Source of the DNA: Macrostomum lignano
Taxonomy: Eukaryota
Direction: 5' to 3'
Length of the DNA: 64,000 nt
NCBI GenBank assembly: GCA_002269645.1
Contig: NIVC01000169.1
Coordinates: 434,001 to 498,000 of the forward strand
Shown here: positions 4,847-63,100 of the stretch, piece by piece
Position numbering within the stretch: position 1 is the stretch's first letter
Layout: each line of letters starts with the position of its first letter
Made by a program: the position numbers and the translations under genes
Notes under the pieces: generated by a model
Seen by the model: only the letters and a program-made list of their open reading frames with translations
Told to the model about the DNA's origin: nothing
The model's database searches: none

Positions 4847-4984
4847 ACCGAAACTAAAATAACAACGACAAAAAAATTTTTAAGTATGCAATTCAAGAAT
4901 AAATTCTCTAGAATTTTTTTCGATTACGAATATTTTAGAATTGATTTTATTTTCTGTGGAGTCCAACAGCCCTAGGCAGCTCAC

Positions 4985-19643: not shown

Positions 19644-20192
19644 CTAATTCCTAAAGTCGTAATCGTCCATAGCCTCATTGTACTCGAGCACGCGCCGCCG
19701 AATCGCTGACTGATTAGTCCAGGTAACATAGTCCTCCATCGAGCGTGACACCAGAAATCCCGGATCGGTGACCACCTGCGGACCAACCCGAACGTGACCG
19801 GCCTCAACAAAAGTGACGGCAGCTTTCACAGTCTCGGCCATGTGACACCGGACCATCACGGCTGATAGGCGGCGCCGGCAGAACGTGGTGGTGGTGACTT
19901 TGTCGGCCAGAAGCAGGTTCCGCCTAGTTGGCACAATGCCAAGCGCGTGCAACCGGCCCAGCAACAGTCGGGTGGCTTCCTCTCGAAACGCATCAGATTC
20001 TGGTAAGTCACGAATTTTCCTAGCAATATCGCGAACCTCGCGCGACAATTTGTTATACAGAGTGAGCTCTTCGCGCGATTTTAAACGATATTTTCGCATC
20101 ATTTTCACTTCGCGCAAATTGTGATCGGACGACCAATTAACTAGGTCGACTTTTTTTAATAGTTTCTTCTCGTGAAAGCGTAGCTTGCGCAT
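19644..20192 (-). CDS. IMP3: U3 snoRNP protein IMP3 (S4-domain), intronless
   Basis: MRKLRFHEKKLLKKVD start, FCRRRL, A.TFVE.GHVRVGP, EDYVTW and DDYD end are typical of Imp3; 182 aa. Acceptor-like ttccag 7 nt upstream of the ATG. Confidence 0.96.
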   Translation of the reverse strand: MRKLRFHEKKLLKKVDLVNWSSDHNLREVKMMRKYRLKSREELTLYNKLSREVRDIARKIRDLPESDAFREEATRLLLGRLHALGIVPTRRNLLLADKVTTTTFCRRRLSAVMVRCHMAETVKAAVTFVEAGHVRVGPQVVTDPGFLVSRSMEDYVTWTNQSAIRRRVLEYNEAMDDYDFRN

Positions 20193-20680
20193 GGTTGGGC
20201 TGGAAGTTGCAAATAATACTACTCAAATAATACTGTGAGTAGTGCGGATGAAGCCTTGGCTTATTTATAAATACAAAAAATATTCAAATAAACAGAAAGA
20301 AGTCAATACTTAAGAAACAAACAAACATTTTATCGTGTATTTCGACCAAAATTAGTTAATGAACTTTATTGCAAGACAAAAAAGGCATAAATGAGGAAAT
20401 AAAAATATATAAAGTCCAATTACTTTTGAAAATTAAAACTCAAAACCAACTAACTGGTTTTTTTTACATTCGAATAATAGGTAAATGTTTTGTTAAGTTA
20501 CAGTTCTGAATACACACGTTTTCAAGTACTACTTACAGTAGGATAAGGACTTAGTTGACGTATTTAAATAAGTAAAATGGGTCATATTTATGCTACTAAA
20601 ATGCAAAACTTCTAACCGATATACTGAGCATAATTTGCTTATACAATTTGTTCGAACATCAGAAACAATATTTGCAACTA

Positions 20681-21737: not shown

Positions 21738-21861
21738 GTGAAGCCTTATTTTTAATGTGTTAATTCATTCCAACGATGAAATCGATTGCTAAAGTATGAA
21801 TAAAGTCTTGTTAGAATTAGCGCAAGTACACACACATGGATCAAAAACCGGAGTTACAAAT

Positions 21862-32400: not shown

Positions 32401-32728
32401 GCTGGTCGGCCATGTTGCTAAAGTACACTGCGCCATTGTACACTAGCAGAGCTCCGCCGCCGTATTCGTGCACCCGAGTCCGGGCGCTCAAACCGGCTGG
32501 CGTCCAGGACACGGGATCCGTGGAGCCGGTCGGACACGAGCACACAACGTAGCGGCCGGCCTCGGCTGGCCGACCTTCAATCCAGTAGACTGTGCCATCG
32601 TTGAGCTCGATATTCGAGTCGACAGTTAAGTCGAATAGATAGACACCGGCAGAAGACACCGAGCTGGCGGTGACTGGCGATTTCCAGGTTCCATATTCAG
32701 CTTCCTGTACGGCCATGTCAATGCGCAT
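26488..32728 (-). CDS. S9 (prolyl oligopeptidase family) serine peptidase, 6 exons, ~680 aa
   Basis: Exons 32728 (or 32716)..32310, 31575..30963, 29885..29726, 28870..28536, 27741..27466 and 26727..26488, all phase-consistent. Catalytic triad GGSAGG / QGDEDRIV / GEQHGFR; HGGPT and DYRGSTGYG motifs; YGTWKSP N-terminus. Confidence 0.93.
26820..27440. repeat. 35-bp minisatellite in S9 intron 5
   Basis: GGGGAATCCCAGGGGTTTATCACCAAGAACCAAAC units. Confidence 0.95.
27860..28500. repeat. 21-bp minisatellite in S9 intron 4
   Basis: CCCCAGATCTAAGATAGGGAG core with degenerate flanking units on both sides. Confidence 0.95.
29895..30956. repeat. 22-bp minisatellite filling S9 intron 2
   Basis: GAGATAGAATGCGAGAGCTGTA and variants, running from just after the donor to just before the acceptor. 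Confidence 0.97.
31660..32285. repeat. 19-bp minisatellite in S9 intron 1
   Basis: CTCAGGTAGGGAAGGTTCC units. Confidence 0.95.
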
Positions 32729-32743
32729 GCAATAAATTGCGTC
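32726..32743 (-). other. Spliced-leader-like relic (GACGCAATTTATTGCATG) containing the first ATG of the S9 peptidase
   Basis: Sequence read directly. 17/18 identity to the M. lignano SL 3' end as I recall it (GACTCAATTTATTGCATG). Preceded by acceptor-like tttctctaaatag. Confidence 0.65.
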
Positions 32744-32914
32744 AGCTATTTAGAGAAATAAGGATGCTTATCACTGTTGAGGGCTTTTGCTGAGCGCTAA
32801 TATTTAAAAAATTATGGGCATTTGGCTGCTGCGTGCGAATAGAAATGATTAACCAATGAGAGCTCTGTTAGCAATTTTTCACACAATATTGAAACTGCGG
32901 GGCAGCGGCTCTAC

Positions 32915-42800: not shown

Positions 42801-43572
42801 TTTTATCTGATGATGCAAGTACTATACTTTTATCTATAGTTTGTTTCAACCTTCCAAAGCTTTCTATTTGTTTTTAAAAGGTACACAAACTTAATGATGT
42901 CTTTTGCTTAGAAAAATGTCTAAATTTTTACAAAAATGACTTTTTGCCACTTGATAGCATACTAATCTAACATTTTATCATTCATTTATTCTTAGATTGT
43001 AGATATTACACATAAAAAACATTTGGTAAAAAAATTGGCTGATAAGGCAATGGCAAGCAAAAATATTGACTTTTTTCTATTTTCCAAAAATGTCCATCTT
43101 ATATGGAATGAGCCTTAAAATGAAAATCTGTGTAACATTTTAAAAAGGCTTTTTGTACGAAGGCCTTTCTTAGAAAACTCTACTCGTGAAGAATGGCGCA
43201 CAGACGGTGCACAGACAGCACAAAAATGGCACATAGACGGCGCATAGATGGCGCACAAATTGTCCCAACAAATTTTTCTGGCACACACTGTGCCACCTTC
43301 CTGACTATGGTTATTACCTAAATGGCAATTACCAAAGTGGTTGTTATTGAAACCAAAGCCAGAAGGGTCATTTTTTGTTATTCATGCAATATCTCATTAT
43401 AACAATAGCTTTATATGTTATTTATAGCTATAGGCCTATTTTACTTTTTCTTTTTAAAAACTCATTTTGTCTACTGATGACAAAAAGTGGCAAACAAAAT
43501 GACCCTATACCATTATAAATAAACACCAAGAAAGACTCACATCCTTACCTGCTCATGAAATATACTCTCCAT
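36857..43572 (-). CDS. ATXN3: Ataxin-3 (Josephin deubiquitinase with UIMs), 4 exons
   Basis: Exons 43572..43549 (MESIFHEQ), 39211..39002 (QDGSLCAQHCLN..MDDSGFFSVQ), 38193..37833 (EHWFTIR, WFNLNS) and 37338..36857 (UIMs, LRQRRAKFL); phases 0, 0, 1. Confidence 0.95.
37380..37770. repeat. 32-bp minisatellite in ATXN3 intron 3
   Basis: GTTAGATCAGGTTCAAGAACTAAGCTCAGGCT, about 12 units. Confidence 0.95.
38325..38955. repeat. ~22-bp minisatellite in ATXN3 intron 2
   Basis: GAGACAGACAGGGACAGGCTTT variants. Confidence 0.93.
40976..41133. mobile_element. Foldback/hairpin element (MITE-like)
   Basis: GTGCAACCTTGGGAATCACTTAGCCATTTCTATTGGCAAC.. is inversely repeated as ..GTTGCCAATAGAAATGGCCAGGTGAATCCCTATATTGCAC. 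Confidence 0.6.
41954..43310. mobile_element. Non-autonomous TIR element (19-bp TIR CCATAGTCAGGAAGGTGGC)
   Basis: Perfect inverted repeats at 41954..41972 and 43292..43310; TGGCGCACA subterminal motifs at both ends; no TSD seen. Confidence 0.7.
42328..43114. mobile_element. TTAA-targeting MITE (Kolobok-like, GG termini) nested in the previous element
   Basis: TTAA|GGCTCATTCCATATAAG(C)ATGG ... CCATCTTATATGGAATGAGCC|TTAA; internal ATGGTCGTAAC motif four times. Confidence 0.8.
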
Positions 43573-44532: not shown

Positions 44533-47227
44533 ATGAGCCACAACATACAGAAAGATAGTGGCTTTGAGCCATTTAAAGGTATCGATACTTTAGCTACTCA
44601 TGCTGGTTACAATCCCAGAGAGCACGAGTCATTAAGTTGCCCTGCCATTCCACCAATCTCGCTTTCAACAACATTCTATCAGAAGGCACCTGGAGAACAT
44701 TTTGTGAGTTTTTCATAAAATCAATGCATTTAGTTCTACCTGAATGAAAATGTACTCGTGGTAGCACAGAAATAGATAGCCCAAAGTATAGATGTATGTA
44801 TAATTGTTATAATGTATATTAATTGAAGTTATACTAGGCTATAATTGTATTATTAAATAATAAATAACAATGCAATCATAAAGAAAATATTTCTTATATG
44901 CATTTCTTTTCTAAGAGAAAAAATTATAGGCAGAAGTCCAACAGTTTATATTATGTTAGCAATTAGTAATAAAGAGACTAAATATGTATTATCTTGTTCT
45001 CTAAAACTAATCCCATGGGGCTAAAAGATTCATCCTTAGTCTTTACCTATCCACTTTGTAGTAACTAGGATAACCAATAGTAGTAACATTCAATTTATTT
45101 AGAGTAGCTAAAAAGAAACATTTGATAAACTGTTTTCCATATCAGGGATTTGACTACTCTCGGGCTGGTAATCCAACGCGTGATTTCTTAGAAAAAGCCC
45201 TCGCCACCTTGGAAGGTGCCAGATTTGCTGCTGCATTTAGTAGCGGTCTGGCTGTCCAATCAGCGCTTGTTCAGCAACTCAAGTCTGGAGACAGTGTCAT
45301 CTGCAATGATGATGTGTATGGTGGTGAGTTAATTCAGCTAATAAGATGGCTTTACAGTTACCTCTACTGTTTACCCATTATGCATACATGCGCAACCCCC
45401 CTCCCCTATGGTTTACACTGGCTGTGCGTGTGCGACGTACTTTTTGACCAAAATGCAACTTACCTATGAAAAAAGCTCAAGCAAAATTAACGTAATTTTG
45501 GGTAAACGGCAGGAGTAACTATAACCGTATTAATAAGGCGTAATGCATCGTCATCTAGTTAGTACTACCTCTTTCGGGTGGACATTTTTGCGACTTTTCT
45601 TGGCTGGTTTTTTTGACGGGCGAATATAATATTAAGCTTGACTAAATTAAGCTCTTAACAAAATTTATTGCCTTTAAATAAATAGTCGATACTCTGGCTG
45701 AATTACAGGTACCAACCGGTATTTCCGCACCATATCATCCAATGCTGGCATCAAAACACACTTCGTTAACCTGGCCACCGACTTGCCGGGCCTAGCCAAA
45801 TGCTTGCAAAGCGACTCGGCTGTTCGCATGGTTTGGATTGAGACGCCAACTAATCCGTTGATGAAGCTGATTGATGTTCGAGCAGTTTCCGAAGCAGTTA
45901 AAAAAGTAAACAAGGATATTCTAGTGGTGTGCGACAACACATTCTTATCGCCAGTGTTTCAGGTAGAAATAATTACTTGAATGTTTTCGATTTCTGTACC
46001 TTCAGCGATTCTATAGATTTAATAAATATTTACTATTTAAGCGTCCATTGGAACTCGGCGCAGACGTTGTCATGCACTCGATGACCAAGTACATTAATGG
46101 TGAGCATAGTAGCAATATAAATTATTGCATATGACTCCTACGCGTGATAGGCCCTAGTGTCAGTGAAGATTCCCAGGTTCGATTCCGTACATGTAGGTTT
46201 GAAACTCGTTCCCGTTAATCCTAGCCCTAGCTGTATTCTCGTTAATCCTAGCTGTATTCCCGCTAATCCTTGCTGTATTCCCGCTAATCCTTGCTGTATT
46301 CCCGTTAATCCCAGCTGTATTCCCGTTAATCCCAGCTGTATTCCCGCTAATCCTTGCTGTATTCCCGTTAATCCCAGCTGTATTCCTGTTAATCCCAGCT
46401 GTGTTCCCGTTAATCCCAGCTGTATTCCCGTCAATCCGAGCTGTATTCCCGTTAATCCCAGCTGTATTCCTGTCAATCCCAGCTGTGTTCCCGTTAATCC
46501 CAGCTGTATTCTCGTTAATCCTTGCTGTATTCCCGTTAATCACAGCTGCATTCCCGTTAATCCCAGCTGTATTCTCGTTAATCCCAGCTGTATTCCCGAC
46601 AATCCCAACTCAGGCCACAGTGATGTAGTGATGGGCTGCTGCATGACCAACAGCGCCCAGCTGCACGAGTGGCTCACCTACAACCAGAAGTCTGCGGGCG
46701 CCACGCCGTCGCCATTCGACTGCTGGCTGGCGCATCGCGGCCTGCGCACTTTGCCGCTGCGAATGCGACAGCACATGGCCAACGGGCTGGCCGTGGCCCG
46801 CCATCTGGAGGCCAGTCGGCACGTTGACCGGGTGCTGCACCCCGGCCTGGAGTCGCATCCGCAGCACCAGCTGGCCAAGCGTCAGCAGCGCGGCTACTCC
46901 GGCATGGTGTCCGCTTATCTACGCGTCGACGCGTCCGCTTTCGTCTCCGCTCTGCGCCTGTTCACCCTGGCCGAGTCGCTTGGCGGCTTCGAATCTCTGG
47001 CCGAAGTGCCGTCAATAATGACTCACGCCTCCGTGCCGCCCGACCAGCGGGCCGAGCTGGGCATCACGGACTCGTTTGTCCGGCTGTCTGTCGGCCTGGA
47101 AGACATTGACGATTTGCTGGCCGATTTGGACCAGGCGTTGGAGAAGGCCGCTAAACCGGCGACTGGCGACGACGGCGGAGCTGCGTCCGATGCAAAGCGG
47201 CGCAGGACGTCGAAGAATGGCCAGTGA
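44533..47227 (+). CDS. CTH: Cystathionine gamma-lyase, 5 exons, 424 aa
   Basis: Exons 44533..44703, 45146..45323, 45709..45962, 46042..46099 and 46614..47227, phase-consistent. YSRAGNPT, DDVYGGT, WIETPTNP, DNTFLSP, PLP-lysine HSMTKYINGHSD, LAESLGGFESL. Confidence 0.96.
46212..46605. repeat. 21-bp minisatellite in CTH intron 4
   Basis: GTTAATCCCAGCTGTATTCCC units ending about 10 nt before the acceptor. Confidence 0.96.
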
Positions 47228-48244
47228 AAAACTTGTAGGAATGACGTTTCAATTTGGTGCCAAATTTGGTACGTCTCAATAAAACAAACAAAAAAATTAT
47301 ATTGCTCGTTGATAGATGGGATAATATTTGGTTAGTTTTAAATTCTCCAATTTATTGCACCCTTTTCCTCCCTGATGTAGTTTTATCCTCATTATTTACC
47401 TTTCATTATAGGCGTTATTAAAAGAATTATCCGGCGAAATATATAGACTGGTGCTCTTGTCAAAAAACTGCTTTGATAAACAGTCTCATACACCGCCGCC
47501 TGGAAGGGGGTCACGGACGAGGTGCCGGTGGCAGAGGTCTAGAGAGAAAGCTGGAGACTTATGTCGAAAATTATAGCACCAGTCGTGGTATATTTCGCAG
47601 GACACCACCATCGTATATCTGCAGTATATTGTAGTTTTTACTCTGTTCAACCCCCAATATCGGTGGCTTTTTGTCTGTTTTACTTGTTTTGCAGGAGTGT
47701 GCTTCGATTTTATTTCTCGCTTATCCATCGGCAGCCAGCGTCTCTGTTAGCTGCAGGCAATCTGATATCGGTGATTTTTTCTCTCATTAGGTTACTTCTT
47801 TTAAGCTTTTTTTGCTGACTAAAGCTCGCGTAGGACAATTCATATAAAAGTAAAATGCATATTTAATCTTCAATATAGGACTTTGCTGCATAGTGCTGCA
47901 AAAGGTTGAAGGCTTGTATTTTGATAATTGTTCATTTACTTAAAGCAGCAATTTCTAAACAGTACAATTAAAAGGTAAATGAAGAAAATTATTAGAAAAT
48001 GCAGGCACAGTGAACGACAACTAAGATTTTAAATACCATGTATGAATAGTTATGATTGAAATGAATATGCGAGCTCTATTCTTGGAAAATACCAAGTATT
48101 TGATTCACGCGGGCCTCCTGTGACAGTGAATTATGAAGGGAAATTGGATTTCGACTGTCTGGGCAGAAGATTGACAAGGCCTAGAACTTCCCAAAGCCTT
48201 AAAAAGCATTAAATTTCTAAATTTAAACAAAAATTTTTACAAAC

Positions 48245-48715
48245 CCTAAACTTCACAATCCCCAAGCTTTACAATCCCTAAACTTCACAATCCCCAAGCT
48301 TTACAATCCCTAAACTTCACAATCCCCAAGCTTCACAATCCCCAAGCTCCACAATCCCCAAGCTTCACAGTCCTCAAGCTTCACAATCCCCCCCCAAGTT
48401 TCACAATCCCTACACCACAATCCCCAAGCTTCACAATCCCAAGCTTCACAATCCCAAGCTTCACAATCCCTAAGCTTCACAATCCCCAAGCTTCACAATC
48501 CCCCCCCAAGTTTCACAATCCCTACACCACAATCCCCAAGCTTCACAATCCCAAGCTTTACAATCCCTAAGCTTCACAATCCCCAAGCTTCACAATCCCC
48601 AAGCTTCACAATCCCTAAGCTTCACAATCCCCAAGCTTCACAATCCCCAAGCTTCACAATCCCCAATCTTCACAATCCCCAAGCTTCACAATCCCTAAGC
48701 TTCACAATCTCTAAT
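48245..48715. repeat. ~16-bp minisatellite (AAGCTTCACAATCCCC) between the convergent CTH and PAAF1 3' ends
   Basis: Direct reading. Confidence 0.93.
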
Positions 48716-48880: not shown

Positions 48881-50200
48881 CTAGCAGCGGTACTTCCTCA
48901 CTCGCCCGTCCCTGCACCCGGTGTAGAGATGGTAAGCGTCCCAGGCCAGGCAGTAGACCGGATCGCAGTCCGGCCCAGTCAGCTGCATCAAAATCTCCGG
49001 CTGCTGGCTAGGCGCCAGGCTAAGTAGCGCGCAGGCGCCATTCTGGGCGCCAACGGCCAACCGGTCGGGTCGGCGCAGGAAGACGCCGCACAGCAGGGGG
49101 CCCAGCATCAGCAGCCGCTGCTCCTCGCCCACATGATCAACGTCGGCGACTTCTTCGAGAGACTCTGACGTCGTCTGTAGCCGGTCGAATCGCAGCGCCA
49201 GCAGGCGGCCGTCGGCGCATCCAACGGCGGCCAGCGCGGCGTCAGGCGTCGGCGCCGAGCAGACAAAATTCACAGCCGACGGCTGGCGACTCCGCCAGAC
49301 GGCGCGCCGCTGGCCAGCCAGGCCGTAGCAGACCAGCCAACCGGACTCGTGCCCGGCCAGGGCCGCTTTGCCAGCCGTGCCGATCTCCCGGTCGGACGCC
49401 GGCGCCGCCTCTGCCGGCAACAGCTGCGGCCCAGGCGTCACAAGGCACAGGCTGTTGACGGGATCTGGCGGGCTGGCCGCCTCCCCGTAGCTGGCGAGGC
49501 ACCGCTGCTGGCCGACATCCCAGAGTCGTACGACGCCGTCTCGACCAGCCGACACCAGATTTCGGCCGCGTTCGATTGGCGCCAGGCCGACTACGCCGCC
49601 GACGTGCCCGACAATGACGGCGGCGCAGGCGCCGGTGTCGCAGGCCCAAACGCGGATGCGGCAGTCGGCGCCGCCGCTCATAGCAACAATGCCCGAAGGG
49701 AAGAACCGGCAGGTGTACACGTCACCTGTGTGACCCTCCAGCCGGCGCCGCGGCTCGCCGGTGGCCGAGTCCCACACGAGGAGCCGGCCGGCTGCGTCTG
49801 AGGAGACGCCGATGCCGCCAGGCGTAACATCGATGCTGTTGACGGCCTTGCCCTGATGGAGCCCGTCTAGAGTAGTTTGCGGCGATTGGAACGTTGCCAA
49901 GTGGACGGCCTCACCGAAGGCGTAGCGCACGCACAGGCGACCCGGCTCCAGCAGGCTGAGTGTCAGCTTCACCGTAGCCGTCTCCCCATCTCCATCCTGC
50001 TGGTCCGCGACTTCGGCCGTCACCTGCTGCGCCGAGGCGGGCGGTCGGAGCGGAGAAATTCGAGCTCGGAAGGTCCGGCTGCTGCCGCTGCCGCCGCCAC
50101 CGCTGTCTGCGGGCCGCCGACGCTGGCGAACGTTGATCCAAATTGGCGCATCGTCAGCCAGCGACAAAGGCCAGTCGGGCTGCACGCTGATCTGCACGTC
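48881..50200 (-). CDS. PAAF1: Proteasomal ATPase-associated factor 1 (Rpn14-like WD40), single exon lacking its own ATG
   Basis: ISVQPDW resembles the PAAF1 N-terminal IQSDW; LEGHTGDVYTCRFFPSGIVAMSGGAD; IERGRNLVSAGRDG; YTGCRDGRVRKY end. Phase-0 acceptor ccccttgcag at 50201. Confidence 0.82.
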   Translation of the reverse strand, partial: DVQISVQPDWPLSLADDAPIWINVRQRRRPADSGGGGSGSSRTFRARISPLRPPASAQQVTAEVADQQDGDGETATVKLTLSLLEPGRLCVRYAFGEAVHLATFQSPQTTLDGLHQGKAVNSIDVTPGGIGVSSDAAGRLLVWDSATGEPRRRLEGHTGDVYTCRFFPSGIVAMSGGADCRIRVWACDTGACAAVIVGHVGGVVGLAPIERGRNLVSAGRDGVVRLWDVGQQRCLASYGEAASPPDPVNSLCLVTPGPQLLPAEAAPASDREIGTAGKAALAGHESGWLVCYGLAGQRRAVWRSRQPSAVNFVCSAPTPDAALAAVGCADGRLLALRFDRLQTTSESLEEVADVDHVGEEQRLLMLGPLLCGVFLRRPDRLAVGAQNGACALLSLAPSQQPEILMQLTGPDCDPVYCLAWDAYHLYTGCRDGRVRKYRC

Positions 50201-50286
50201 CTGCAAGGGGATTGGGATGCCTCTTGTATGCGATCCCGAATATTTCGTCTGCTCGCGACCTGCTCTCAATGCACTACTGCTAGTTC

Positions 50287-50580
50287 AGTAGTAATAATAC
50301 AATATTATGTGCAGATGTGCAACCGACAGCTCAGCCGCAGCTATTGCGCGGCGCATCTGAAGGCTGCGTACGGCTGTTCAGTCCAAGGACTGGGGGGTCG
50401 CCACGCGCATCCTCAATTACCCCAGCTAATGCTGGCACCCATTTAACAGCGGGGTGAACTGAAGCAATGCAGAGTTAAGTGTCTTGCTCAGGGACAAAAA
50501 CTGTTCCGAGTGGGATCGGGAATTGAACCCCCGACCTTTCAGTCGTGAGTTCGACGCTCTAACCCCCTTAGCAGCTTTCC
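50287..50580 (-). mobile_element. tRNA-derived SINE with CORE-like central domain
   Basis: Minus strand: A-box-like GGTTAGAGCG, B-box GGTTCAATTCC, then CCCTGAGCAAGACACTTAACTCT..CAGTTCACCCCGCTGTTAAATGGG (resembles the CORE/MIR core), ending in an (ATT/ACT)-type tail. Confidence 0.75.
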
Positions 50581-51172
50581 AAGCCTAAATTAGATAATGA
50601 CACATACCTTATAAAAAACTGAACAGAGAACAAAACTGTTTAGCCAAATCAATCACTAAACCGGTAATGATATGAGTAATTAATGATCAACTCGTATGTC
50701 AGATGGAAAACTGAGAGATGGAACGTTTAGTTAATGGTTGTCTAACTCTTATACCCCGTCCCGTGTATTAATTAGGAAGATTTTAATGAATTGGTGAATT
50801 CTATAATGGAACACAATTCGGTGTGTGCAGAGTCAGAGTAGGCTAAATTACAATATGAAGAAAAATAAAACAGCTAATAGTCACAGAATTTTTCACAAAG
50901 TTAAAATGATAAACCTACCTTGTGCGTACTATAAATTAGACAAAAGAAACAGAATGCAATTTATTATAATTTTTGAAGAGCTGGCGCGCGCATACAGGTG
51001 TCAGAATAAAACTGAATTTTCTCTCAAAATAATCAAGCATGCCACGAGAGTAGGGAAAAAACTAACAAAGTGCGTGGGTAGAAGGCCTAAATTTAAATGA
51101 AGTTTCGAATATTTCTCAAGTCAAGCTGAACTGACACCATAGCTTGTACAGTAGCTAGTACAATTTGAAGAA

Positions 51173-54100
51173 TCACAGGATAATTTGGTTTCTGTAGCTG
51201 CGATCCAACTCTTTGTGCGGCAGGACAATGGAATTGCGAACTATTGTCTCCGGTGCCACGGACACGTGCGAGCCTGAAGTGAAAATTCATATTGATAAAA
51301 TTAATGTGATATTCTCATAAAATATCAGCAGCGATACACTGAAGGGCCGGATAGGATAGGTTGGAGAGGGGGTGGCCGGGGAGGTGGTTGGAGAGGGGGT
51401 GGCCGGGGAGGTGGTTGGAGAGGATGGCCGGGGAGGTGGTTGGAGGGGATGGCCGGAGAGGTGGTTGGAGGGGATGGCCAGAGAGGTGGTTGGAGGGGAT
51501 GGCCGGGGAGGTGGTTGGAGGGGATGGCCAGAGAGGTGGTTGGAGGGGATGGCCAGAGAGGTGGTTGGAGGGGATGGCCAGAGAGGTGGTTGGAGGGGAT
51601 GGCCGGGGAGGTGGTTGGAGGGGATGGCCAGAGAGGTGGTTGGAGGGGATGGCCGGGGAAGTGGTTGGAGGGGATGGCCAGGGAGGTGGTTGGAGGGGAT
51701 GGCCGGGGAGGTGGCCGGAGAGGGGATTTATTACGAATCACGTATTACAGATTTTTTAGCGAAGCAACTTTTCGAAGTAAATTAGGAAGGAATGCTTTAT
51801 CTACTTAATGAGCAGTATTACCACATATATAAAAAACGTACTTTCGATTTCAAAAACCTTCCCTCCTCTACTCACCAATGACAGTGCATGACGGATTCAG
51901 CTGGCCCTTCTCATTAAACAAATCTTTCGTTTCAATTTTAGCAAACGGCTTGTTGGGATTCGGATCGGTTGGCGTGCCTTCAACCCGGGTCCATTCGCCA
52001 ATCGTAGCACTGGAGCCCAGCACGGCGAATAACACGCAGGCGTGGTCGCGCACTACGGCGCCTTGAAGCAGAATCGATTCGCGAACCCGAGCCCCGTTGC
52101 CAATGGTTACGAATCGTTCGACGGACACGTTGGGACCGAGCACGGCTGTGGGGCTCACAGTAGCGGTCGGATGAATGTACACGTTACCAATGATCTTGGG
52201 ACCGTCCGGGATTGACTGGGCGGTCGCCAACCGGTCTGGGTGGCTGGTGCGGTACAGCTCCAGCATGTGGCGGTTGGCATAAATGGCGGCTCTGGAGTTT
52301 GAGGCATGAAAAACCCTTGAATGCTTTAATAATTTAATCAATGACTGAAACACGTCAATCATATCGTTATCGTGTGTCGTGTGTCACGAAGCATTAAAAA
52401 ACTTTTTAATATTTCACTATCAATCACTGTTCCACGGACCCTCAGGTTATTTTAACACTGCTAAATACTGCGTTAGCTACATGTTCACAAAGTGCAAGCG
52501 AATGTTGCCCACTGCAAGGAGCGGAGAATATTGACTAGATTCACGGAGATTGAGTATTCTCCGCTCCCTGTATTAGCGGGACACGTTTTGTCTATGGTAG
52601 AAGAAGAAAGTGTTCAATCAACCCATGGATGAAGGAATAGAAAGGATTGCTCATCTGAAAGTGAGTCTATGGCCAAGACTTCCTTAAAATTGGGATATTC
52701 CCCCCCCATGAATTCCATTGGCTGCTTGAATTTAATAATAGTCCCCCTAATTTCTTACTTGCTGCAGTTTGTACGGGGGGAATTCCAAAGTCACGATTAA
52801 CGTTAGACATCTATAACTGCTTTCTTCCTTTGGGCTACGACGTTTAAGGGAAAGAAATTAGCATTTGAAACAAGAGAAAAGGTTATCTATGTTAATACTA
52901 CAGCTTAGCATGCGCGTTGAATTTCCCCCGCGTACAAGCTTCAGCCATTAAAAAATTGGGGGGGGGACTTATTAAATTCAAGCAGCCAATGGAATTCATA
53001 GGTGGGAATATCCCAATTTTAAGGAAGTCTTGGCCATAGACTCACTTTCAGATGAGCAATCCTTTCTATTCCTTCATCCATGAATCAACTCACTCTGGCT
53101 CACGGCGTTAATTTTATTGTCTAATGGCAGCGGAGGTTACTTAGTGAGAATCTCCGCTAGCAAAGCACTAGCGACATAGACAAGGCGTACAGGCAAAGTG
53201 GGATGCATAAAATTAATCTTTTTATTCGCGTGCTCTGCGACTGCTACAGCGGCACTTTGTCTTGAAATGTGTTTGTTTGTTGCTTTTACGTTCTTTCTTG
53301 TTTCTAATTTGCCTTTAACTCGATTTACTAAATGCATTTCGTGAGTTCAAATACGAATTCACCCGTTTCTTTTCTTTGAATGTTTTAGAGGGCCTGGGAT
53401 GCCAAATGGCACTATGATTCTGAAAAAACCCCAAGAACCTCTAGAGAAGGCATTAAGAAATGATATTATTGTATATTATTGTATTGAAGCTCTAGAACCT
53501 TTAGAACCTCAAGAACCTCTAGAGTAGGCATTAAGAAATGATATTATTGTATATTATTGTATTGAAGCTCTAGAACCTCCAGAACCTTAAGAACCTCTAG
53601 AGTAGGCATTAAGAAATGATATTATTGTATTGAAGCTCTAGAACCTCCAGAACCTTAAGAACCTCTAGAGTAGGCATTAAGAAATGATATTATTGTATAT
53701 TATTGCATTGAAGCTCTAGAACCTCCAGAACCTCAAGAACCTCTAGAGTAGGCATTAAGAAATGATATTATTGTATATTATTGTATTGAAGCTCTAGAAC
53801 CTCCAGAACCTCAAGAACCTCTAGAGTAGGCATTAAGAAATGATATTATTGTATATTATTGTATTGAAGCTCTAGAACCTCCAGAACCTTAAGAACCTCT
53901 AGAGTAGGCATTAAGAAATGATATTATTGTATATTATTGTATTGAAGCTCTAGAACCTCCAGAACCTCAAGAACCTCTAGAGTAGGCATTAAGAAATGAT
54001 ATTATTGTATATTATTGTATTGAAGCTCTAGAACCTCCAGAACCTCAAGAACCTCTAGAGTAGGCATTAAGAAATGATATTATTGTATATTATTGTATTG

Positions 54101-57100: not shown

Positions 57101-60100
57101 CAAGAGTAGGTTTCCTTGACATTCGTAATTTTGTACTATTAAGTTATTCTTTTTAAAATGTTGGCATGAACCATGATATGCTCAATTAAAAAAATCGTTG
57201 ACAAGAGCACAGTACCCTATCATCACAACAAAGCAGTTTGTCTCCCAGACCTGATGAAGCCGCGAAGCGAACCCGACTGACCAGCGCAGCCGGCGAGTCC
57301 GAGACGTCCAGCGCCTGCCAGGACGCGACGATTTTCGCTCACCTGACCGACGAGTCGGCCCGGCAAGACGGAGTTGACCGCTGCTCTCCAATGACAACAG
57401 AGGCGACGAGCAGCGACGAGAAGTCGGAGTTGGCATCTACCAGTCCGAGGATGAATTTAGGTGTTTCCGATAGGCGTCAGGGTGTCGAACCTGAAGCTTT
57501 GATTGGCCTGCAGCAGAAGCTGGAGCACAATGAAGAGGCTCTTCATCGCTTGATTGCTAGAGCAAGTGAAAGCGAAGGCCAGCAGACAGGCAACTTTTCT
57601 GATGATTCAGTGGAAAAGCGAGAGCAAATGTTGCAAGACGAGCGAGCTAGACTCAGAAAAGTTCTGAGCGAACTAGGACAAATGAGCCAAGAGATGAGAG
57701 AGTTGAATAGGCAACTGCAAGATGCAGAGGACAAGTTTGGCAATAAGATAAACGTCAGCACTCAAGATGATACTACGCCAATAAGCGACTCGCAGATCGC
57801 TGAGCTGCGACAGGAGCTCGCCGATGAGAGGCAGCGACTCATTCGGGCTCTGGCTGAGCTGGAGGACAGAAATAGTGAAATCGAGCGGTACAGGCAAGAG
57901 CTCGATGCGCTCACTCAGAGGCAGGAGAGCGAGACGGGCGTAATACGACTACAAGAACAGTTGGACTCTGAGAAACAATCTGCAAGCTCTCTTACCTCGG
58001 AGCTCAACTTGAAAATTGGACTTAATGAAGAGTTACAGGAGCAGCTGCGGAGCCTTCTGGAGTCAAGAAAGACTGATCACGAATATATCAAGACTCTTAA
58101 ACAGAGACTTACTGATAAAACACAGCATCTGATCGAAATGCAACAAGGACTGTCTAAAAAAGATGACCATATTGGTGAGCTGCAAGAGCAGCTGCGTAGT
58201 CTGTCCGAGACTAGGCGATGCGAGATTGAGCATCATAGCAAACAGATTAAGATCCTCAACACTCAAATCGATGATGCGACTGAACAAGTTTCAAAACTGA
58301 ATGAGACAAGACAGTTTAATATTGACCAACACAGTGAAACGACTGAGACCATGCAGGCTCAGCTTAAGGATGCAGCTGAAAAGATTGCTAGTCTGACCGA
58401 GTCCAAGCAGTTTGATGCTGATCAGTTCCATCAGCAAATAGAAAGAATGGAAGCTCAGCTGAAAGACGCAGGCCAACAGATTGCTAGTTTGACCAAATCG
58501 AAGCAGCTCGATACTGATCAATACCAGCAACAGATTGAAACATTGAAGGCTCAGCTCAAGGATGCAGTTGAACAGAGTAATACTGCCAAACAGATGACTA
58601 GCTTGACTGAGTCCAAGACGATCGATAATGATCAGTACAATCAACAGATTGAAAGAATGAATGCTGTGCTCAAGGATGCAGCTGAACAGATTTCTAGCCT
58701 TACTGAGTCCAAGAAGTTTGATGCTGACCGATCTCATCTACAGATAGAAGCAATGACGACTGAGCTCAAAGATGCAGCTGAGCAGATTGCTAATCTGACC
58801 CAGGCTAAGCAGCTCGATGCGGAGCAGTACAACCAACAGCTGGAAGCAATGAAGGCCCAGCTCAAAGATGCAGCCGAACAGATTGCCAGTTTGACAGAGT
58901 CAAAGCAGCTGGATGCTGACCAGTTTCATCAACAACTGGAAGCAATGAAGGCTGAGCTGACGGATGCAAATGGAAAGATTGCTAGCTTGACTGAGACCAT
59001 CAAGCTCGATACTGACCAACATCAGCAACAGATAGAGGCAATGACGACTGAGCTTAAAAATGCAGACCAGTACAATCAGCAGCTGGAAAGAATGAAGTCC
59101 GAGCTCAAGAATGCATCTGAAGAGATTTATAACCTGACTGAGTCGAAAAAGTTTGATGCTAATCAATACAATCAAGACATAGAAAGAATGAAAGCCGAAC
59201 TCAAGGATGCAGCTAAACAGATTGCTTGTCTGACCGAGTCTAAGCACCTTGATGCTCAACAGTTAGAAACACTGAAGGCTGATCTTAAGGATGCATTGGA
59301 ACAGATTGCTAGCCTGACTCAGTCCAAAAAGCATGATGCTGATCAGTACAATCAACAGATAGAAACTGTGAAGACTGAGCTCAAGGATGCAGTTGAACAG
59401 ATTTCCATCCTGACTGACTCCAGGCAGCTTGATGCGGAGCAGTACAACCAACAGCTGGAAGCAATGAAGACTAAGCTCAAGGATGCAGCTGAACAGATGG
59501 CCAGTTTGACAAAGTCAAAGCAGCTGGATGCTGACCAGTTCCATCAACAACTGGAAGCAATGAAGGCTGACCTGACGGATGCAAATGGAAAGATTGCTAG
59601 CTTGACTGAGACCATCAAGCTCGATACTGACCAACATCAGCAACAGATAGAGGCAATGAAGGCTGAGCTTAAGAATGCATCTGAAAAGACTGCGCATCTA
59701 ACCGAGTCCAAGCAGCTTGATGCGGACCAGTACAATCAACAGCTGGAAGCAATGAAGGCTGAGCTCAAAGATGCAGTTGAACAGATTGCCAGTTTGACAG
59801 AGTCAAAGCAGCTGGATGCTGATCAGTTCCATCAACAACTGGAAACAATGAAGGCTCAGGTCAAGGATGCAACTGAAAAGATCGCTAGCCTTACTGAGTC
59901 TAAGCAGCTTGATGCGGAGCAGTACAATCAACAGCTCGAAACAATGAAGTCTGAGCTTAAGAGTGCATCTGAACAGATAGCTACACTGATTGAGTCTAAG
60001 AAGCATGATGCTGATCAATACAATCAACAGCTGGAAACAATGAAAGCTGAGCTCAAGGATGCAGCTGAACAGATTGCTAGTCTGACCGCGTCCAAGCAGC

Positions 60101-63100
60101 CTGATGCTCAACAACTGGAAACAATGAAGGATCGACTCAAGGATGCAACTGAAGAGATTTCGAGCTTGACAGAATCCAAGCAGCTCGATGCTGATCAGTA
60201 CCAGCAACAGATAGAAAGAATGAAGGCTGAGCTCAAAGATTCAGCCGAGCAGATTGCTAGTCTGACAGAGTCAAAACAGTGTGATGCTCAACAGATACAT
60301 ACAATGAAGGCTGAGCTCAAGGATGCAGCCGAACAGATTGCTAGCCTTACTGACTCCAAGCAGCTGGATGCGGAACAGTACAATCAACACCTGGAAACAA
60401 TACAAGCGCAGCTCAAGGAATCAGTTGAAGAGGCTCGAGTGCTGAGTGCTGCTCATATGCAAGAGCAGAAAAACCGACAGATGCTGGAGAATCAAGCAAA
60501 GACTCGTGAGAGAGACTTAATTAATGAAATTGATAAAAAGTCCAGCGAGATAGTGAGGCTGAAAGTGCAAATTCGAGAGAAAAATTTTGCTATTCAGAGT
60601 GCGACTCAACGATGCGACGGATTTTTAAAACAGGTAAAAATTTTGGAATCGAAATGTCTTGAACTGAAATCTCTGATTGATGCTCAGTTAGAATTCAGCA
60701 AAGAGTTCAAGGACATCATTGACGAACATAGGACAGCTAAAGATCGGATGCAAGGCGATCTCGAGTCAGAACTTAAAGCTTGCGGCGTTGAAATAGACTT
60801 CCTTCGTGCTGAGAATCTGTCGCTGACTGACAAGATCGATCAAGAGACGGTACAGCGAATCGCTGTAGAAAAACAGCTTCAAGCCGAAAAGCTTTCAACA
60901 AGTGATCTGACAAAGGAGCTGAATGCGAGTGCTATTCAAGTTGCTGAGCTATCAAAGCAACTGAGCAGTGTTATGCAGCTGAAAGCTACCGAAATCGATT
61001 GTCGAAAGGCTGCTGAAGAACAGTTGGAAGCTGAGCGATGCAAACTGGCAGAAGCGATGACAAAATTAAAGAAATTCAATGAAACTGCCGAATCTCTGAG
61101 TGCTCAAGTCGATCGACAAAAGTCGGTGGAGCCTCGGGTTACTGCAGAAACGCACACACAGACTAGCTTCGTCGGGACAGCAGCCGATGTAGAGCAAAAT
61201 CCCGCGGCTGATACTGCTCATCAATTAAAGACGCTATTGTTGCATCTGGAAGAAAAAAGCTGCCAAATTCGGTCTTTGAAGAGCCAAGTTGAGCTAATGA
61301 ATTCAGAGAAGCTCAATATCCTGCAGGCATTTGAAAGTATCGCGAAGGAATTAAAGGACAAAAGACTAGAAGTTGAAGTTCTCTTAGCCAAAGTGGACAA
61401 TCTGAAGGCTAGGAGTGCGTACTGCTGTCACCAGGTTTATGCACGGCAAGCAAATGCAGATCAATTGAACGCAAGCCTGCGTCGCATTCGAGGGCCATTT
61501 CGGCCAGCTTGCAGCAGCGCATTCTTGCCAGATGTACCGGGCGATAATTCGCCTCTGCTAGATGCCGCAACCAGGCATACAATTGAACGACGCATTACCT
61601 ACTTAGAAGCCACAAGCGAACAGCTGGGCCAACCTTCGAGATTAACTCAACTGCTCGGCTCCTCCAACTCCGGCCAAGTCAGCATCGGAGAGAGTCACGA
61701 CAATGGAAGGCAATGAGGCCTCGTTGAATGCATCCGAAATCGGATTTTTTGTGCAACTCGATGATTGATGGCGAGGACACACGGTTTGTGCAAAACGAAC
61801 AGCTGCCTACTATGAAGACCTTTTCATGTATAACGCACAGTGTCGCTTCGTACGTATTCTTCTTTCCTCTATTGTCTTCTAATTTCCTCTATTGTACAGT
61901 AAAATAGCCACTACCTTTTCATATATATTGCAATCAGCTACTAAGCAGATGAAGAGAACCGGTCAAACCTCAGTTTTGTGGTCTGGATTGATTTTCGACT
62001 TTCTACGAGTATTTATAGCTAAGCGAAATTTTTCACTGATTGACTAAACGCTCTACAAAATTTTAAATCTTTAGCTCTAACAAACAAATCTGTTCAAAAT
62101 AGATATCTTTCAGAAATGCAAATTTATATTTTTTGTTTGCTTTTTTATCAAAAAGAGGGTAAAGTTCGGGAAGACAACTGAATTGGGGTAAAATTCGGGA
62201 AGAGAACTGAGTAGGTGGTAAAGTTCGGGAAGAGAACTGAGTAGGTGGTAAATCCGGGAAGAGAACTGAGTAGGTGGTAAAGTTCGGGAAGAGAACTGAG
62301 TAGGTGGTAAATCCGGGAAGAGAACTGAGTAGGTGGTAAAGTTCGGGAAGAGAACTGAGTAGGTGGTAAAGTTCGGGAAGAGAACTGAGTAGGTGGTAAA
62401 GTTCGGGAAGAGAACTGAGTAGGTGGTAAACTTCGGGAAGAGAACTGAGTAGGTGGTAAATCCGGGAAGAGAACTGAGTAGGTGGTAAACTTCGGGAAGA
62501 GAACTGAGTAGGTGGTAAACTTCGGGAAGAGAACTGAGTAGGTGGTAAATCCGGGAAGAGAACTGAGTAGGTGGTAAATCCGGGAAGAGAACTGAGTAGG
62601 TGGTAAACTTCGGGAAGAGAACTGAGTAGGTGGTAAAGTTCGGGAAGAGAACTGAGTAGGTGGTAAAGTTCGGGAAGAGAACTGAGTAGGTGGTAAAGTT
62701 CGGGAAGAGAACTGAGTAGGTGGTAAACTTCGGGAAGAGAACTGAGTAGGTGGTAAACTTCGGGAAGAGAACTGAGTAGGTGGTAAACTTCGGGAAGAGA
62801 ACTGAGTAGGTGGTAAATCCGGGAAGAGAACTGAGTAGGTGGTAAATCCGGGAAGAGAACTGAGTAGGTGGTAAACTTCGGGAAGAGAACTGAGTAGGTG
62901 GTAAACTACGGGAAGAGAACTGAGTAGGTGGTAAAGTTCGGGAAGAGAACTGAGTAGGTGGTAAAGTTCGGGAAGAGAACTGAGTAGGTGGTAAAGTTCG
63001 GGAAGAGAACTGAGTAGGTAGTAAAATTCGGGAAGAGCGGCAGAGAAGAGCTTGAGAATGTTACACAGTCGAGAATTACAACTACGCAGCATCTCGCTAT

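What the first reader, a model, noticed from the sequence alone, without database searches (positions are those of the whole stretch)
50190..50270. PAAF1 has no ATG of its own; a phase-0 acceptor sits exactly where an SL-donated AUG would restore the N-terminus
Seen: the conserved N-terminus begins right after cccaatccccttgCAG|GAC GTG CAG ATC AGC GTG CAG CCC GAC TGG, and the first in-frame Met is about 170 codons later, inside the WD40 region. I found no ATG-bearing phase-0 exon between here and the GMPPA stop. Adding AUG gives MDVQISVQPDW, the same length as human MAAPLRIQSDW as recalled. Knowledge: the terminal AUG of flatworm SLs can act as the initiator codon. Inference: translation of this gene depends on trans-splicing. 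More speculatively, the acceptor CAATCCCCTTGCAG also resembles a decayed SL end (CAATTTATTGCATG).
Basis: partly seen in the sequence, partly recalled or inferred. Interest (0 to 1): 0.75.

Follow-up and report, generated by a model that had tools for sequence, protein, structure and literature searches.

The report
Flatworm PAAF1 gene borrowing its start codon
In the flatworm Macrostomum lignano the PAAF1 gene has no start codon of its own and most likely gets it from the AUG at the end of the spliced leader RNA, a mechanism known in parasitic flatworms for 20 years, so this is an ordinary new example that could not be confirmed at the RNA level here.

Summary
The window is Macrostomum lignano scaffold NIVC01000169.1. 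On the minus strand a single 1,320-nt exon (50200..48881) encodes a full PAAF1 orthologue. Its conserved N-terminus (ISVQPDW) starts four codons after ccccTTGCAG|GAC. There is no in-frame ATG between the upstream stop (50287-50285) and codon 174.

The acceptor fits the published M. lignano trans-splice motif YTNCAG and is in phase 0. The 35-nt spliced leader carries one ATG, at its 3' end. Joining it gives MDVQISVQPDW, the same length as vertebrate and oyster N-termini. The next four AUGs are all out of frame.

The paralogous copy keeps the acceptor but has 5 nt of indels just upstream, so nothing upstream is coding. The 972-nt spacer to the GMPPA stop has no consensus donor. NCBI lists both copies as 5'-partial.

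I found no RNA evidence, so SL addition at 50200 remains inferred (confidence about 0.78). A control lowers the weight of the NCBI label: the neighbouring ATXN3-like model also starts at an AG, yet it has a real, unannotated ATG exon 4.3 kb upstream.

The "decayed SL" resemblance is chance. The GMPPA-PAAF1 fusion is out of frame in the paralogue. SL-AUG initiation is established in flatworms, so this is a new member of a known kind.

The parts
50201..50220 (-). Pyrimidine-rich tract and 3' splice acceptor, gcatcccaatccccTTGCAG| (AG = 50202-50201). Proposed SL trans-splice site, phase 0 relative to the PAAF1 frame.
   Evidence: Sequence. TTGCAG fits the published M. lignano trans-splice motif [T/C]TNCAG (PMC8629364). 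12 of 17 pyrimidines at -20..-4. Conserved in paralogue L001.
48881..50200 (-). Single coding exon of the PAAF1 orthologue (439 codons plus TAG) with no initiator ATG of its own.
   Evidence: ORF list. Pfam WD40 hits. Best hits are named PAAF1. 100% identical to NIVC01000169.1; NCBI protein P0090 and paralogue PAA68593.1 are labelled 'partial'.
50171..50191 (-). Codons 4-10, ISVQPDW: the conserved PAAF1 N-terminal motif ([IL]x[IL]QxDW).
   Evidence: Alignment A1: Q8, D10 and W11 are invariant in 13 orthologues.
50285..50287 (-). First in-frame stop (TGA) upstream of the exon. The 28 codons between it and the exon hold no ATG.
   Evidence: In paralogue L001 the same stretch reads in another frame because of +4 and +1 nt indels.
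50149..50151 (-). First ATG downstream of the acceptor. It is out of frame (+1) and opens a 43-codon ORF. The next three ATGs are also in frame +1.
   Evidence: Model mRNA of SL plus exon.
49679..49681 (-). First in-frame ATG (codon 174). Starting here would give a 266-aa product lacking the N-domain and the first WD40 blade(s).
50201..51172 (-). Spacer/outron between the GMPPA stop and the PAAF1 acceptor (972 nt). It has no GT[AG]AG donor and holds the GMPPA 3'UTR with AATAAA at 50965-50960.
   Evidence: GC falls from 0.69 (CDS; GC3 0.79) to 0.51 and then 0.35 going upstream.
51173..51273 (-). Last exon of the upstream same-strand gene GMPPA (..[19 protein letters not shown]; TGA at 51175-51173).
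   Evidence: Sequence. Pfam NTP_transferase/GMPPB_C on the annotated 430-aa product.
51874..51876 (-). End of the penultimate GMPPA exon (51876) and its donor GT (51875-51874), phase 1. Splicing it directly to the phase-0 PAAF1 acceptor would be out of frame.
   Evidence: Sequence and ORF 51868-52362.
50180..50194 (-). Two further in-frame AGs, GTGCAG|ATC (exon start 50191) and GTGCAG|CCC (exon start 50179). These are possible minor SL acceptors giving MISVQPDW or MPDW.
   Evidence: Both lack the Y at -6 and have weaker pyrimidine tracts.
50262..50264 (-).
   Evidence: Frame worked out. The 5-nt indels in L001 break the frame.

Best explanation
PAAF1 of Macrostomum lignano is made from an mRNA whose 5' end is created by spliced-leader trans-splicing at TTGCAG|GAC (exon start 50200, minus strand). 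The primary transcript either reads through from GMPPA, 972 nt upstream on the same strand (an operon by the published M. lignano criterion), or starts in the spacer. Its first splice signal is an acceptor with no cis donor in front of it, so the SL RNA supplies the donor. The 35-nt SL (CGGTCTCTTACTGCGAAGACTCAATTTATTGCATG) ends in the only AUG it contains. After joining, that AUG is the first AUG of the mRNA, in frame and directly abutting codon GAC, and the ribosome starts there: M-DVQISVQPDW... (440 aa). Without the SL there is no usable start, because the next four AUGs are out of frame. Shown here: the gene structure, the missing ATG, the phase and motif of the acceptor, the non-coding nature of the upstream stretch, the absence of a consensus cis donor, and the match of the N-terminal length to orthologues. 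Inferred: that the SL is actually joined at 50200 and that its AUG is actually used.
For: Window = M. lignano NIVC01000169.1. PAAF1 identity. No in-frame ATG from the TGA at 50287 to codon 174. The conserved motif starts at codon 4, and M+DVQ aligns with the Met of oyster PAAF1 and matches the vertebrate length. The acceptor fits [T/C]TNCAG, the top motif at 21,754 M. lignano SL sites (PMC8629364), with about a 2% chance of an in-frame copy in the needed zone. The SL has one ATG, at its 3' end, and SL+exon gives a 440-aa ORF from the first AUG, while AUGs 2-5 are in frame +1. Paralogue L001 keeps the acceptor and the CDS (7 substitutions, 0 indels in 1,317 nt) but has +4 and +1 nt indels within 60 nt upstream and a different upstream reading, again without ATG. 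There is no GT[AG]AG in the 972-nt spacer of either copy. Only one short ATG..|GTRAG phase-0 candidate exists in 13.8 kb upstream, against 3.1+/-2.1 in shuffles. The same type of scan, run as a motif search for the conserved N-terminus, did recover the true exon 1 of the ATXN3-like neighbour. NCBI models of both copies are 5'-partial and begin one codon after the AG, and they come from a pipeline that cuts transcripts at SL-read peaks (PMC5730564). 30-39% of M. lignano genes are SL trans-spliced, enriched for conserved genes. The SL AUG serves as initiator in schistosomes and Echinococcus (Cheng et al. 2006, as cited in PMC9851317, PMC3510090 and PMC12582326).
Against: No transcript, read or peptide evidence was obtainable. 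The exact product MDVQ... is not in the protein collection, the SL-exon junction 24-mer is absent from the metagenome contigs, and no paper or held supplement mentions the gene. The NCBI CDS starts at V (50197), not D (50200), which is unexplained. The ATXN3-like neighbour shows that a model starting right at an AG can simply have missed an upstream ATG exon. The AUG context is only half favourable (U at -3, G at +4). The paralogues are too similar (about 99% in this region) to give deep evolutionary support.
Confidence: 0.78

Rival explanations
1. A small cis-spliced upstream exon carrying ATG, missed by the annotation, is joined to the acceptor at 50200. The gene then has its own start codon.
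For: This is exactly what is true of the ATXN3-like gene in the same window. Its NCBI model starts at the AG of exon 2 (39211), but exon 1 ATGGAGAGTATATTTCATGAGCAG|gtaagg (MESIFHEQ) lies at 43572-43549. About 35% of M. lignano donors do not match GT[AG]AG. Seven formal ATG..|GT phase-0 combinations exist in the spacer.
Against: None of the seven has a consensus donor. One is disrupted by a 20-nt indel in the paralogue, and three lie in the GMPPA 3'UTR before its AATAAA. The only consensus candidate in 13.8 kb (53081-53046) sits inside a GMPPA intron upstream of two GMPPA acceptors and is within chance expectation. The same-strand GMPPA gene occupies everything beyond 972 nt. Orthologues need only M plus 0-9 residues here, so no conserved sequence is missing.
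Confidence: 0.08
2. The SL is added mainly at one of the two downstream in-frame AGs (exon start 50191 or 50179), giving MISVQPDW... or MPDW.... The gene is still SL-AUG dependent but has a shorter N-terminus.
For: Both are CAG| sites in phase 0 within 21 nt.
Against: Both read GTGCAG and lack the Y at -6 of the published motif. Their pyrimidine tracts are weaker (10/17 and 7/17, against 12/17). The NCBI model starts upstream of both, at 50197.
Confidence: 0.05
3. The mRNA is not trans-spliced and translation starts at a non-AUG codon in the 28 in-frame codons upstream (TTG, ACG or ATC are present).
For: The upstream frame is open for 28 codons and contains near-cognate codons.
Against: In the paralogue the same stretch is frame-shifted by 5 nt and reads as a different peptide. 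GC3 drops from 0.79 to 0.50 at the boundary. The orthologue N-termini end here.
Confidence: 0.03
4. Only a truncated protein is made, from the in-frame ATG at codon 174, or the locus is a decaying copy that is no longer translated.
For: ATG 49681 is the first genomic in-frame ATG. Five of the 7 paralogue differences are non-synonymous, though this is too few to test.
Against: Four out-of-frame AUGs precede it. The 173 upstream codons are open, have coding GC3, and align with the orthologues' N-domain including invariant residues. Both copies keep 439 intact codons with no indel.
Confidence: 0.03
5. A GMPPA-PAAF1 fusion protein is made by skipping the last GMPPA exon (donor at 51875 to acceptor gagag|CA at 50262).
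For: Phase 1 donor plus phase 1 acceptor is in frame in this copy.
Against: The acceptor has a purine-rich, poor tract. In the paralogue 5 nt of indels between 50262 and 50200 break the frame. The fusion would delete the conserved GMPPA C-terminus. Joining the donor to the strong acceptor at 50200 is out of frame.
Confidence: 0.02
6. Origin hypothesis: PAAF1 is a retrocopy of an SL-bearing mRNA, and the acceptor is a decayed SL 3' end.
For: The CDS is intronless. CAAT..TTGCA.G occurs in the same order as in the SL. A true genomic SL copy exists elsewhere in the window.
Against: The alignment score is 2, reached by 41% of TTGCAG-ending, 14% of YTNCAG-ending and 5.5% of CAG-ending 40-mers. The true relic scores 14 against a background maximum of 8. 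There is no A-rich tail after the 3'UTR.
Confidence: 0.02

Closest known systems
SL-AUG-initiated trans-spliced mRNAs of Schistosoma mansoni and S. japonicum (Cheng, Cohen, Ndegwa & Davis 2006, J Biol Chem 281:733; read here only through PMC9851317, PMC3510090 and PMC12582326)
   Same: The flatworm SL ends in AUG. The acceptor is in phase 0 with the ORF. There is no own AUG at the conserved N-terminus, so the SL AUG is required to reproduce the orthologous N-terminus.
   Different: The organism is different: a free-living macrostomid rather than a member of Neodermata. It has a single 35-nt SL. In the schistosome work the SL-mRNA junctions were sequenced and SL-AUG use was tested experimentally; here both are inferred.
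Echinococcus granulosus SL-bearing cDNAs that need the SL AUG (PMC3510090)
   Same: The argument is the same: the N-terminus matches orthologues only if the SL AUG is the initiator. That paper also reports that this usage is conserved within Neodermata.
   Different: Those cases rest on cDNA clones that contain the SL. PAAF1 is not among the examples I could read.
slORFs, i.e. ORFs created by SL-borne start codons in nematodes, Oikopleura and trypanosomes (PMC9851317)
   Same: The start codon is supplied in trans by the leader.
   Different: Those are mostly alternative or overlapping ORFs using near-cognate NUG codons. Here the SL AUG would be the sole start of the main, conserved ORF.
Downstream gene of an SL-resolved operon in M. 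lignano (PMC8629364) or C. elegans
   Same: An upstream gene lies on the same strand, the spacer is under 1 kb, and an orphan acceptor sits at the 5' end of the downstream gene.
   Different: Co-transcription with GMPPA is not shown. M. lignano uses one SL for both operonic and monocistronic genes, with no SL2 class.

Membership tests
Flatworm mRNA that uses the SL 3'-terminal AUG as initiator (Cheng et al. 2006 class) | The organism's SL ends in AUG immediately before the donor site. | tested here: met
   The published M. lignano SL, CGGTCTCTTACTGCGAAGACTCAATTTATTGCATG|GTAAG (PMC8629364), has a single ATG at positions 33-35. The window is M. lignano.
Flatworm mRNA that uses the SL 3'-terminal AUG as initiator (Cheng et al. 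2006 class) | The mRNA is SL trans-spliced at an acceptor at the 5' end of the coding exon. | not testable with these tools
   No RNA data were reachable. Indirect support: a YTNCAG acceptor, no cis donor in the spacer, and a 5'-partial NCBI model from an SL-peak-cutting pipeline.
Flatworm mRNA that uses the SL 3'-terminal AUG as initiator (Cheng et al. 2006 class) | The SL AUG is in frame with the main ORF with no intervening stop. | tested here: met
   SL+exon gives a 440-codon ORF from the SL AUG.
Flatworm mRNA that uses the SL 3'-terminal AUG as initiator (Cheng et al. 2006 class) | There is no alternative in-frame AUG near the N-terminus, and the SL AUG is needed to match orthologous N-termini. 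| tested here: met
   The next in-frame AUG is codon 174, and four out-of-frame AUGs lie between. N-terminal alignment.
Flatworm mRNA that uses the SL 3'-terminal AUG as initiator (Cheng et al. 2006 class) | Translation actually initiates at the SL AUG. | not testable with these tools
   This needs ribosome profiling, N-terminal proteomics or a reporter.
PAAF1 / Rpn14 orthologue | Full-length similarity to named PAAF1 proteins, the N-terminal [IL]QxDW domain, a WD40 propeller and the C-terminal LTGxDCDP...CRD motif. | tested here: met
   36-40% identity over 71-99% of the length to named PAAF1. The invariant columns include Q8, D10, W11 and the CRFFPSG block. The C-terminal LTGPDCDPVY...CRDGRVRKY is present. 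Pfam WD40 E=3.6e-23.
M. lignano operon pair (operational definition of PMC8629364) | Adjacent genes on the same strand, repeat-adjusted spacer under 1 kb, and an SL trans-spliced downstream gene. | tested here: inconclusive
   Same strand, 972 nt from stop to acceptor, about 760 nt from AATAAA: met. The SL status of PAAF1 and co-transcription were not testable.
Retrocopy carrying a genomic SL relic | The upstream sequence is significantly similar to the SL, there is a poly(A) remnant, and introns are absent. | tested here: not met
   SL similarity is at chance. There is no A-run after the 3'UTR. Only the lack of introns fits.

The most novel reading that the evidence does not exclude
PAAF1 output is gated purely by trans-splicing. 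Because no transcript of the locus is translatable until the SL is added, the amount of this proteasome-assembly chaperone would be set by how efficiently a GMPPA-PAAF1 polycistronic precursor is processed. In addition, loss of genomic start codons in favour of the SL AUG would be an ancestral, widespread feature reaching back to the base of Rhabditophora, so that many '5'-partial' M. lignano models are in fact complete.
Probability: 0.15. Interest if true: 0.5.

Novelty: new member of a known kind. Interest (0 to 1): 0.3.

Why it matters
If confirmed, this is a clean, easily tested case of obligatory SL-AUG initiation in the one flatworm where transgenesis works. The mechanism could therefore be tested in vivo with reporters.

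It also has a practical annotation consequence. Proteins such as PAA68593.1 that GenBank lists as 'partial' may be complete apart from a Met that is not encoded at the locus. Transgenes or knock-ins for such genes must supply their own ATG.

The ATXN3-like control shows the opposite trap: some 'partial' models in this assembly have simply lost a real first exon. The two cases have to be separated gene by gene.

In the papers I could search I found no statement that the SL AUG is used as an initiator in M. lignano. A macrostomid example would extend the phenomenon beyond Neodermata. This is an incremental advance, not a surprise.

Tried and rejected
1. Decayed SL relic at the acceptor: tested with an alignment against window-wide backgrounds and found at chance.
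2. Direct transcript evidence. An exact look-up of the predicted product MDVQ...KYRC in the 153-billion-gene index found nothing on record. An exact search of the SL|exon junction 24-mer in the JGI metagenome contigs gave 0 hits, as expected. The cluster of the NCBI protein has only the two genomic copies.
3. Literature. No paper contains 'Mlig022838'. The held supplements of PMC5730564 and PMC5816591 contain neither it nor PAAF1, and PMC8629364 has no held supplements. Cheng et al. 2006 is not held.
4. SL RNA gene or other RNA in the window: Rfam at gathering threshold found none and ARAGORN found none. Only a T-arm-like 13-mer turned up in the spacer.
5. PDB sequence search, done to obtain a human PAAF1 N-terminus, returned only generic WD40 chains. 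Vertebrate sequences were used instead.
6. A second PAAF1 search with a profile, meant to find other flatworm orthologues and see whether they also lack an ATG, returned no named flatworm among the best 120, and the unnamed transcript-derived hits all begin with their own Met plus several residues.
7. A survey of the annotation for the rest of the window, using exact look-ups of two single-ORF proteins (IMP3-like and a 341-aa ORF), found neither on record.
8. I first counted the ATXN3-like gene as a second SL-AUG case, then rejected this when its exon 1 was found.
9. The spacer is not repeated elsewhere in the window, so I could not repeat-adjust the spacer length.
Full report
**Where the window comes from.** The PAAF1-like product is 99% identical to 'hypothetical protein BOX15_Mlig022838g1, partial [Macrostomum lignano]' (PAA68593.1). 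A second member of that cluster is encoded on NIVC01000169.1 of assembly GCA_002269645.1. The 13.3 kb fetched around it is 100% identical to the window. The other copy (L001, NIVC01001383.1) is a paralogue or homeologue. It is about 96% identical over the whole locus and about 99% identical in the region studied.

**The observation.** The gene lies on the minus strand. The sequence reads ...gcatcccaatccccttgcag|GAC GTG CAG ATC AGC GTG CAG CCC GAC TGG, with the exon starting at 50200.
- One uninterrupted frame of 439 codons runs to the TAG at 48883-48881.
- It has WD40 repeats. Its best named hits are all proteasomal ATPase-associated factor 1, at 36-40% identity over up to 99% of the length.
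- In an alignment with 12 orthologues, Q8, D10 and W11 of the M-prefixed protein are invariant. The conserved motif [IL]x[IL]QxDW begins at the fourth codon of the exon.
- Upstream in frame there are 28 codons to a TGA (50287-50285) with no ATG.
- Downstream, the first in-frame ATG is codon 174 (49681), inside the WD40 region. The four ATGs before it are all in frame +1.

**Is the upstream stretch coding?** No.
- The paralogue keeps CCCCTTGCAG|GACGTGCAG and the whole CDS: 7 substitutions and no indel in 1,317 nt.
- It carries a 4-nt and a 1-nt insertion within the 60 nt before the acceptor. The in-frame upstream reading there is a completely different peptide, again without ATG.
- GC3 is 0.79 in the CDS and 0.50 in the 28 upstream codons.
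- The spacer as a whole has 13 substitutions and 5 indel events in about 1 kb.

**Could a cis exon supply the ATG?**
- The same-strand gene upstream is GMPPA. Its last exon (51273-51173) ends ..[20 protein letters not shown], and an AATAAA follows at 50965.
- The 972-nt spacer has 7 ATGs and 7 formal phase-0 ATG..|GT combinations. None has the M. lignano donor consensus GT[A/G]AG, which PMC8629364 reports at about 65% of donor regions (122,399 of 187,627). The pentamer is absent from the spacer in both copies.
- Over the 13.8 kb up to the window edge there is one short ATG..|GTRAG phase-0 candidate (53081-53046, inside the 10.8-kb GMPPA intron). Composition-preserving shuffles give 3.1+/-2.1.
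- As a control, I searched upstream of the ATXN3-like gene for its conserved N-terminal motif. This found a real first exon at 43572-43549, ATGGAGAGTATATTTCATGAGCAG|gtaagg (MESIFHEQ, next to QDGSLCAQHC of exon 2; from memory the human ATXN3 protein starts MESIFHEKQEGSLCAQHC). The NCBI model starts only at exon 2, right after an AG at 39211.

This control cuts both ways. Real first exons in this genome carry consensus donors and can be found. It also shows that a 'partial' model starting at an AG is not proof of SL-AUG use.

**The trans-splicing reading.**
- The M. lignano SL is CGGTCTCTTACTGCGAAGACTCAATTTATTGCATG. The top motif at 21,754 SL acceptor sites is [T/C]TNCAG (PMC8629364).
- TTGCAG at 50206-50201 fits this motif. 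The two other in-frame AGs just downstream (GTGCAG|ATC and GTGCAG|CCC) do not, and they have weaker pyrimidine tracts.
- YTNCAG occurs at 0.22% of positions in the window. An in-frame copy within the roughly 10-codon zone where a start is needed has about a 2% chance.
- The SL has a single ATG, its last three bases. SL+exon gives a 440-codon ORF from the first AUG of the mRNA, in the context uauugcAUGg.
- The product starts MDVQISVQPDW. It has 11 residues up to the invariant W, like Sphenodon MVATVRIQTDW and Pyxicephalus MAARIYIQSDW. The added M falls in the same alignment column as the Met of Crassostrea MERLILQSDW.
- If the SL AUG were skipped, scanning ribosomes would meet four out-of-frame AUGs (ORFs of 43, 8, 6 and 50 codons) before the in-frame one.

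**Context from the literature.**
- Adjacent same-strand genes less than 1 kb apart with an SL-spliced downstream partner are classed as operons (PMC5730564, PMC8629364).
- The annotation pipeline cuts transcripts at peaks of SL-containing reads and then runs TransDecoder. This would yield exactly a 5'-partial ORF beginning at the acceptor.
[quoted passage not shown] The same holds in Echinococcus, where the usage is conserved across Neodermata (PMC9851317, PMC3510090, PMC12582326).
- I found no paper stating this for M. lignano.

**What is not shown.** I could not reach any RNA data. The predicted product is not in the protein index. The junction 24-mer is not in the metagenome contigs. No paper or held supplement names the gene. 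SL addition at 50200 and use of its AUG are therefore inferences.

One detail is unexplained. The NCBI CDS of both copies starts at V (50197), one codon after the AG, whereas the ATXN3-like model starts exactly at its AG. A possible reason is that the first exon base here is G, the same as the first intron base of the SL RNA (ATG|GTAAG). SL trimming could then remove one extra base, which would move the first complete codon to GTG. This is untested.

- Decayed SL. A semi-global alignment of the SL to the 40 nt before the exon scores 2. That value is reached by 41% of TTGCAG-ending, 14% of YTNCAG-ending and 5.5% of CAG-ending 40-mers in the window. The true genomic SL copy at 32760-32726 scores 14, against a background maximum of 8. 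The resemblance comes from the acceptor consensus itself, so the idea is rejected.
- GMPPA-PAAF1 fusion. The donor at 51875 is phase 1, so joining it to the phase-0 acceptor at 50200 is out of frame. Joining it to gagag|CA at 50262 is in frame in this copy but is broken by the 5 nt of indels in the paralogue. The idea is unlikely.

**Verdict.** The main interpretation is the best-supported explanation (about 0.78) but is unproven at the RNA and protein level. The speculative part is rejected. This is a new example, in a free-living macrostomid, of a mechanism described in 2006, so its interest is modest.

Noticed in passing
window 32726-32760 (minus strand): A genome-encoded copy of the spliced leader (last 14 nt exact, CAATTTATTGCATG; the whole 35 nt aligns with score 14 against a background maximum of 8). 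It sits directly in front of a multi-exon S9-peptidase-like gene. Its ATG (32728-32726) is in frame with [20 protein letters not shown], and a second ATG follows 4 codons later. PMC8629364 describes the same kind of thing for Mlig013257.g1. How an SL copy came to be at the 5' end of an intron-containing gene is unexplained.
   Followed up: partly
window 43549-43572 and 39211 (minus strand): The NCBI model of the ATXN3/Josephin-like gene starts at exon 2 (39211, right after ttaaacag|). It misses exon 1, ATGGAGAGTATATTTCATGAGCAG|gtaagg (MESIFHEQ), 4.3 kb upstream. So 5'-partial models in this assembly are a mixture of possible SL-AUG cases and lost first exons.
   Followed up: yes
window 50197 vs 50200: The NCBI CDS of both PAAF1 copies begins at V, one codon after the acceptor, whereas the ATXN3-like model begins exactly at its AG. 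A possible cause is over-trimming of SL reads when the first exon base is G, the same as the first intron base of the SL RNA. Untested.
   Followed up: no
window 20192-20205 (minus strand): The IMP3-like gene has its own ATG 7 nt after an acceptor (cttccag|CCCAACCATG). If the SL is added there, the SL AUG is out of frame and would open a short overlapping upstream ORF. This is the opposite situation to PAAF1.
   Followed up: no
window 57238-61716 (plus strand): A 1,492-codon open frame encoding a repetitive coiled-coil protein lies antisense inside the roughly 10.8-kb GMPPA intron (between the GMPPA exons at about 63149 and 52300). It is listed as a called gene (1,682 aa) in the paralogous locus but not in the listing for this one.
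   Followed up: no
window 50518-50530 (minus strand): A tRNA T-arm-like GGGTTCAATTCCC lies within a tRNA-looking stretch (about 50440-50590) in the GMPPA-PAAF1 spacer. ARAGORN calls no tRNA and there is no other copy in the window. It may be a SINE-like remnant.
   Followed up: partly
window 48239-48709, 51366-51714, 46229-46607: Minisatellites flank the gene: a 16-nt unit x29 just after the PAAF1 3' end, a 25-nt unit x14 in the last GMPPA intron, and a 21-nt unit x18 in an intron of the convergent cystathionine-gamma-lyase-like gene. Similar arrays fill much of the window, for example 1466-2584, 3233-4975 and 13946-16247.
   Followed up: no
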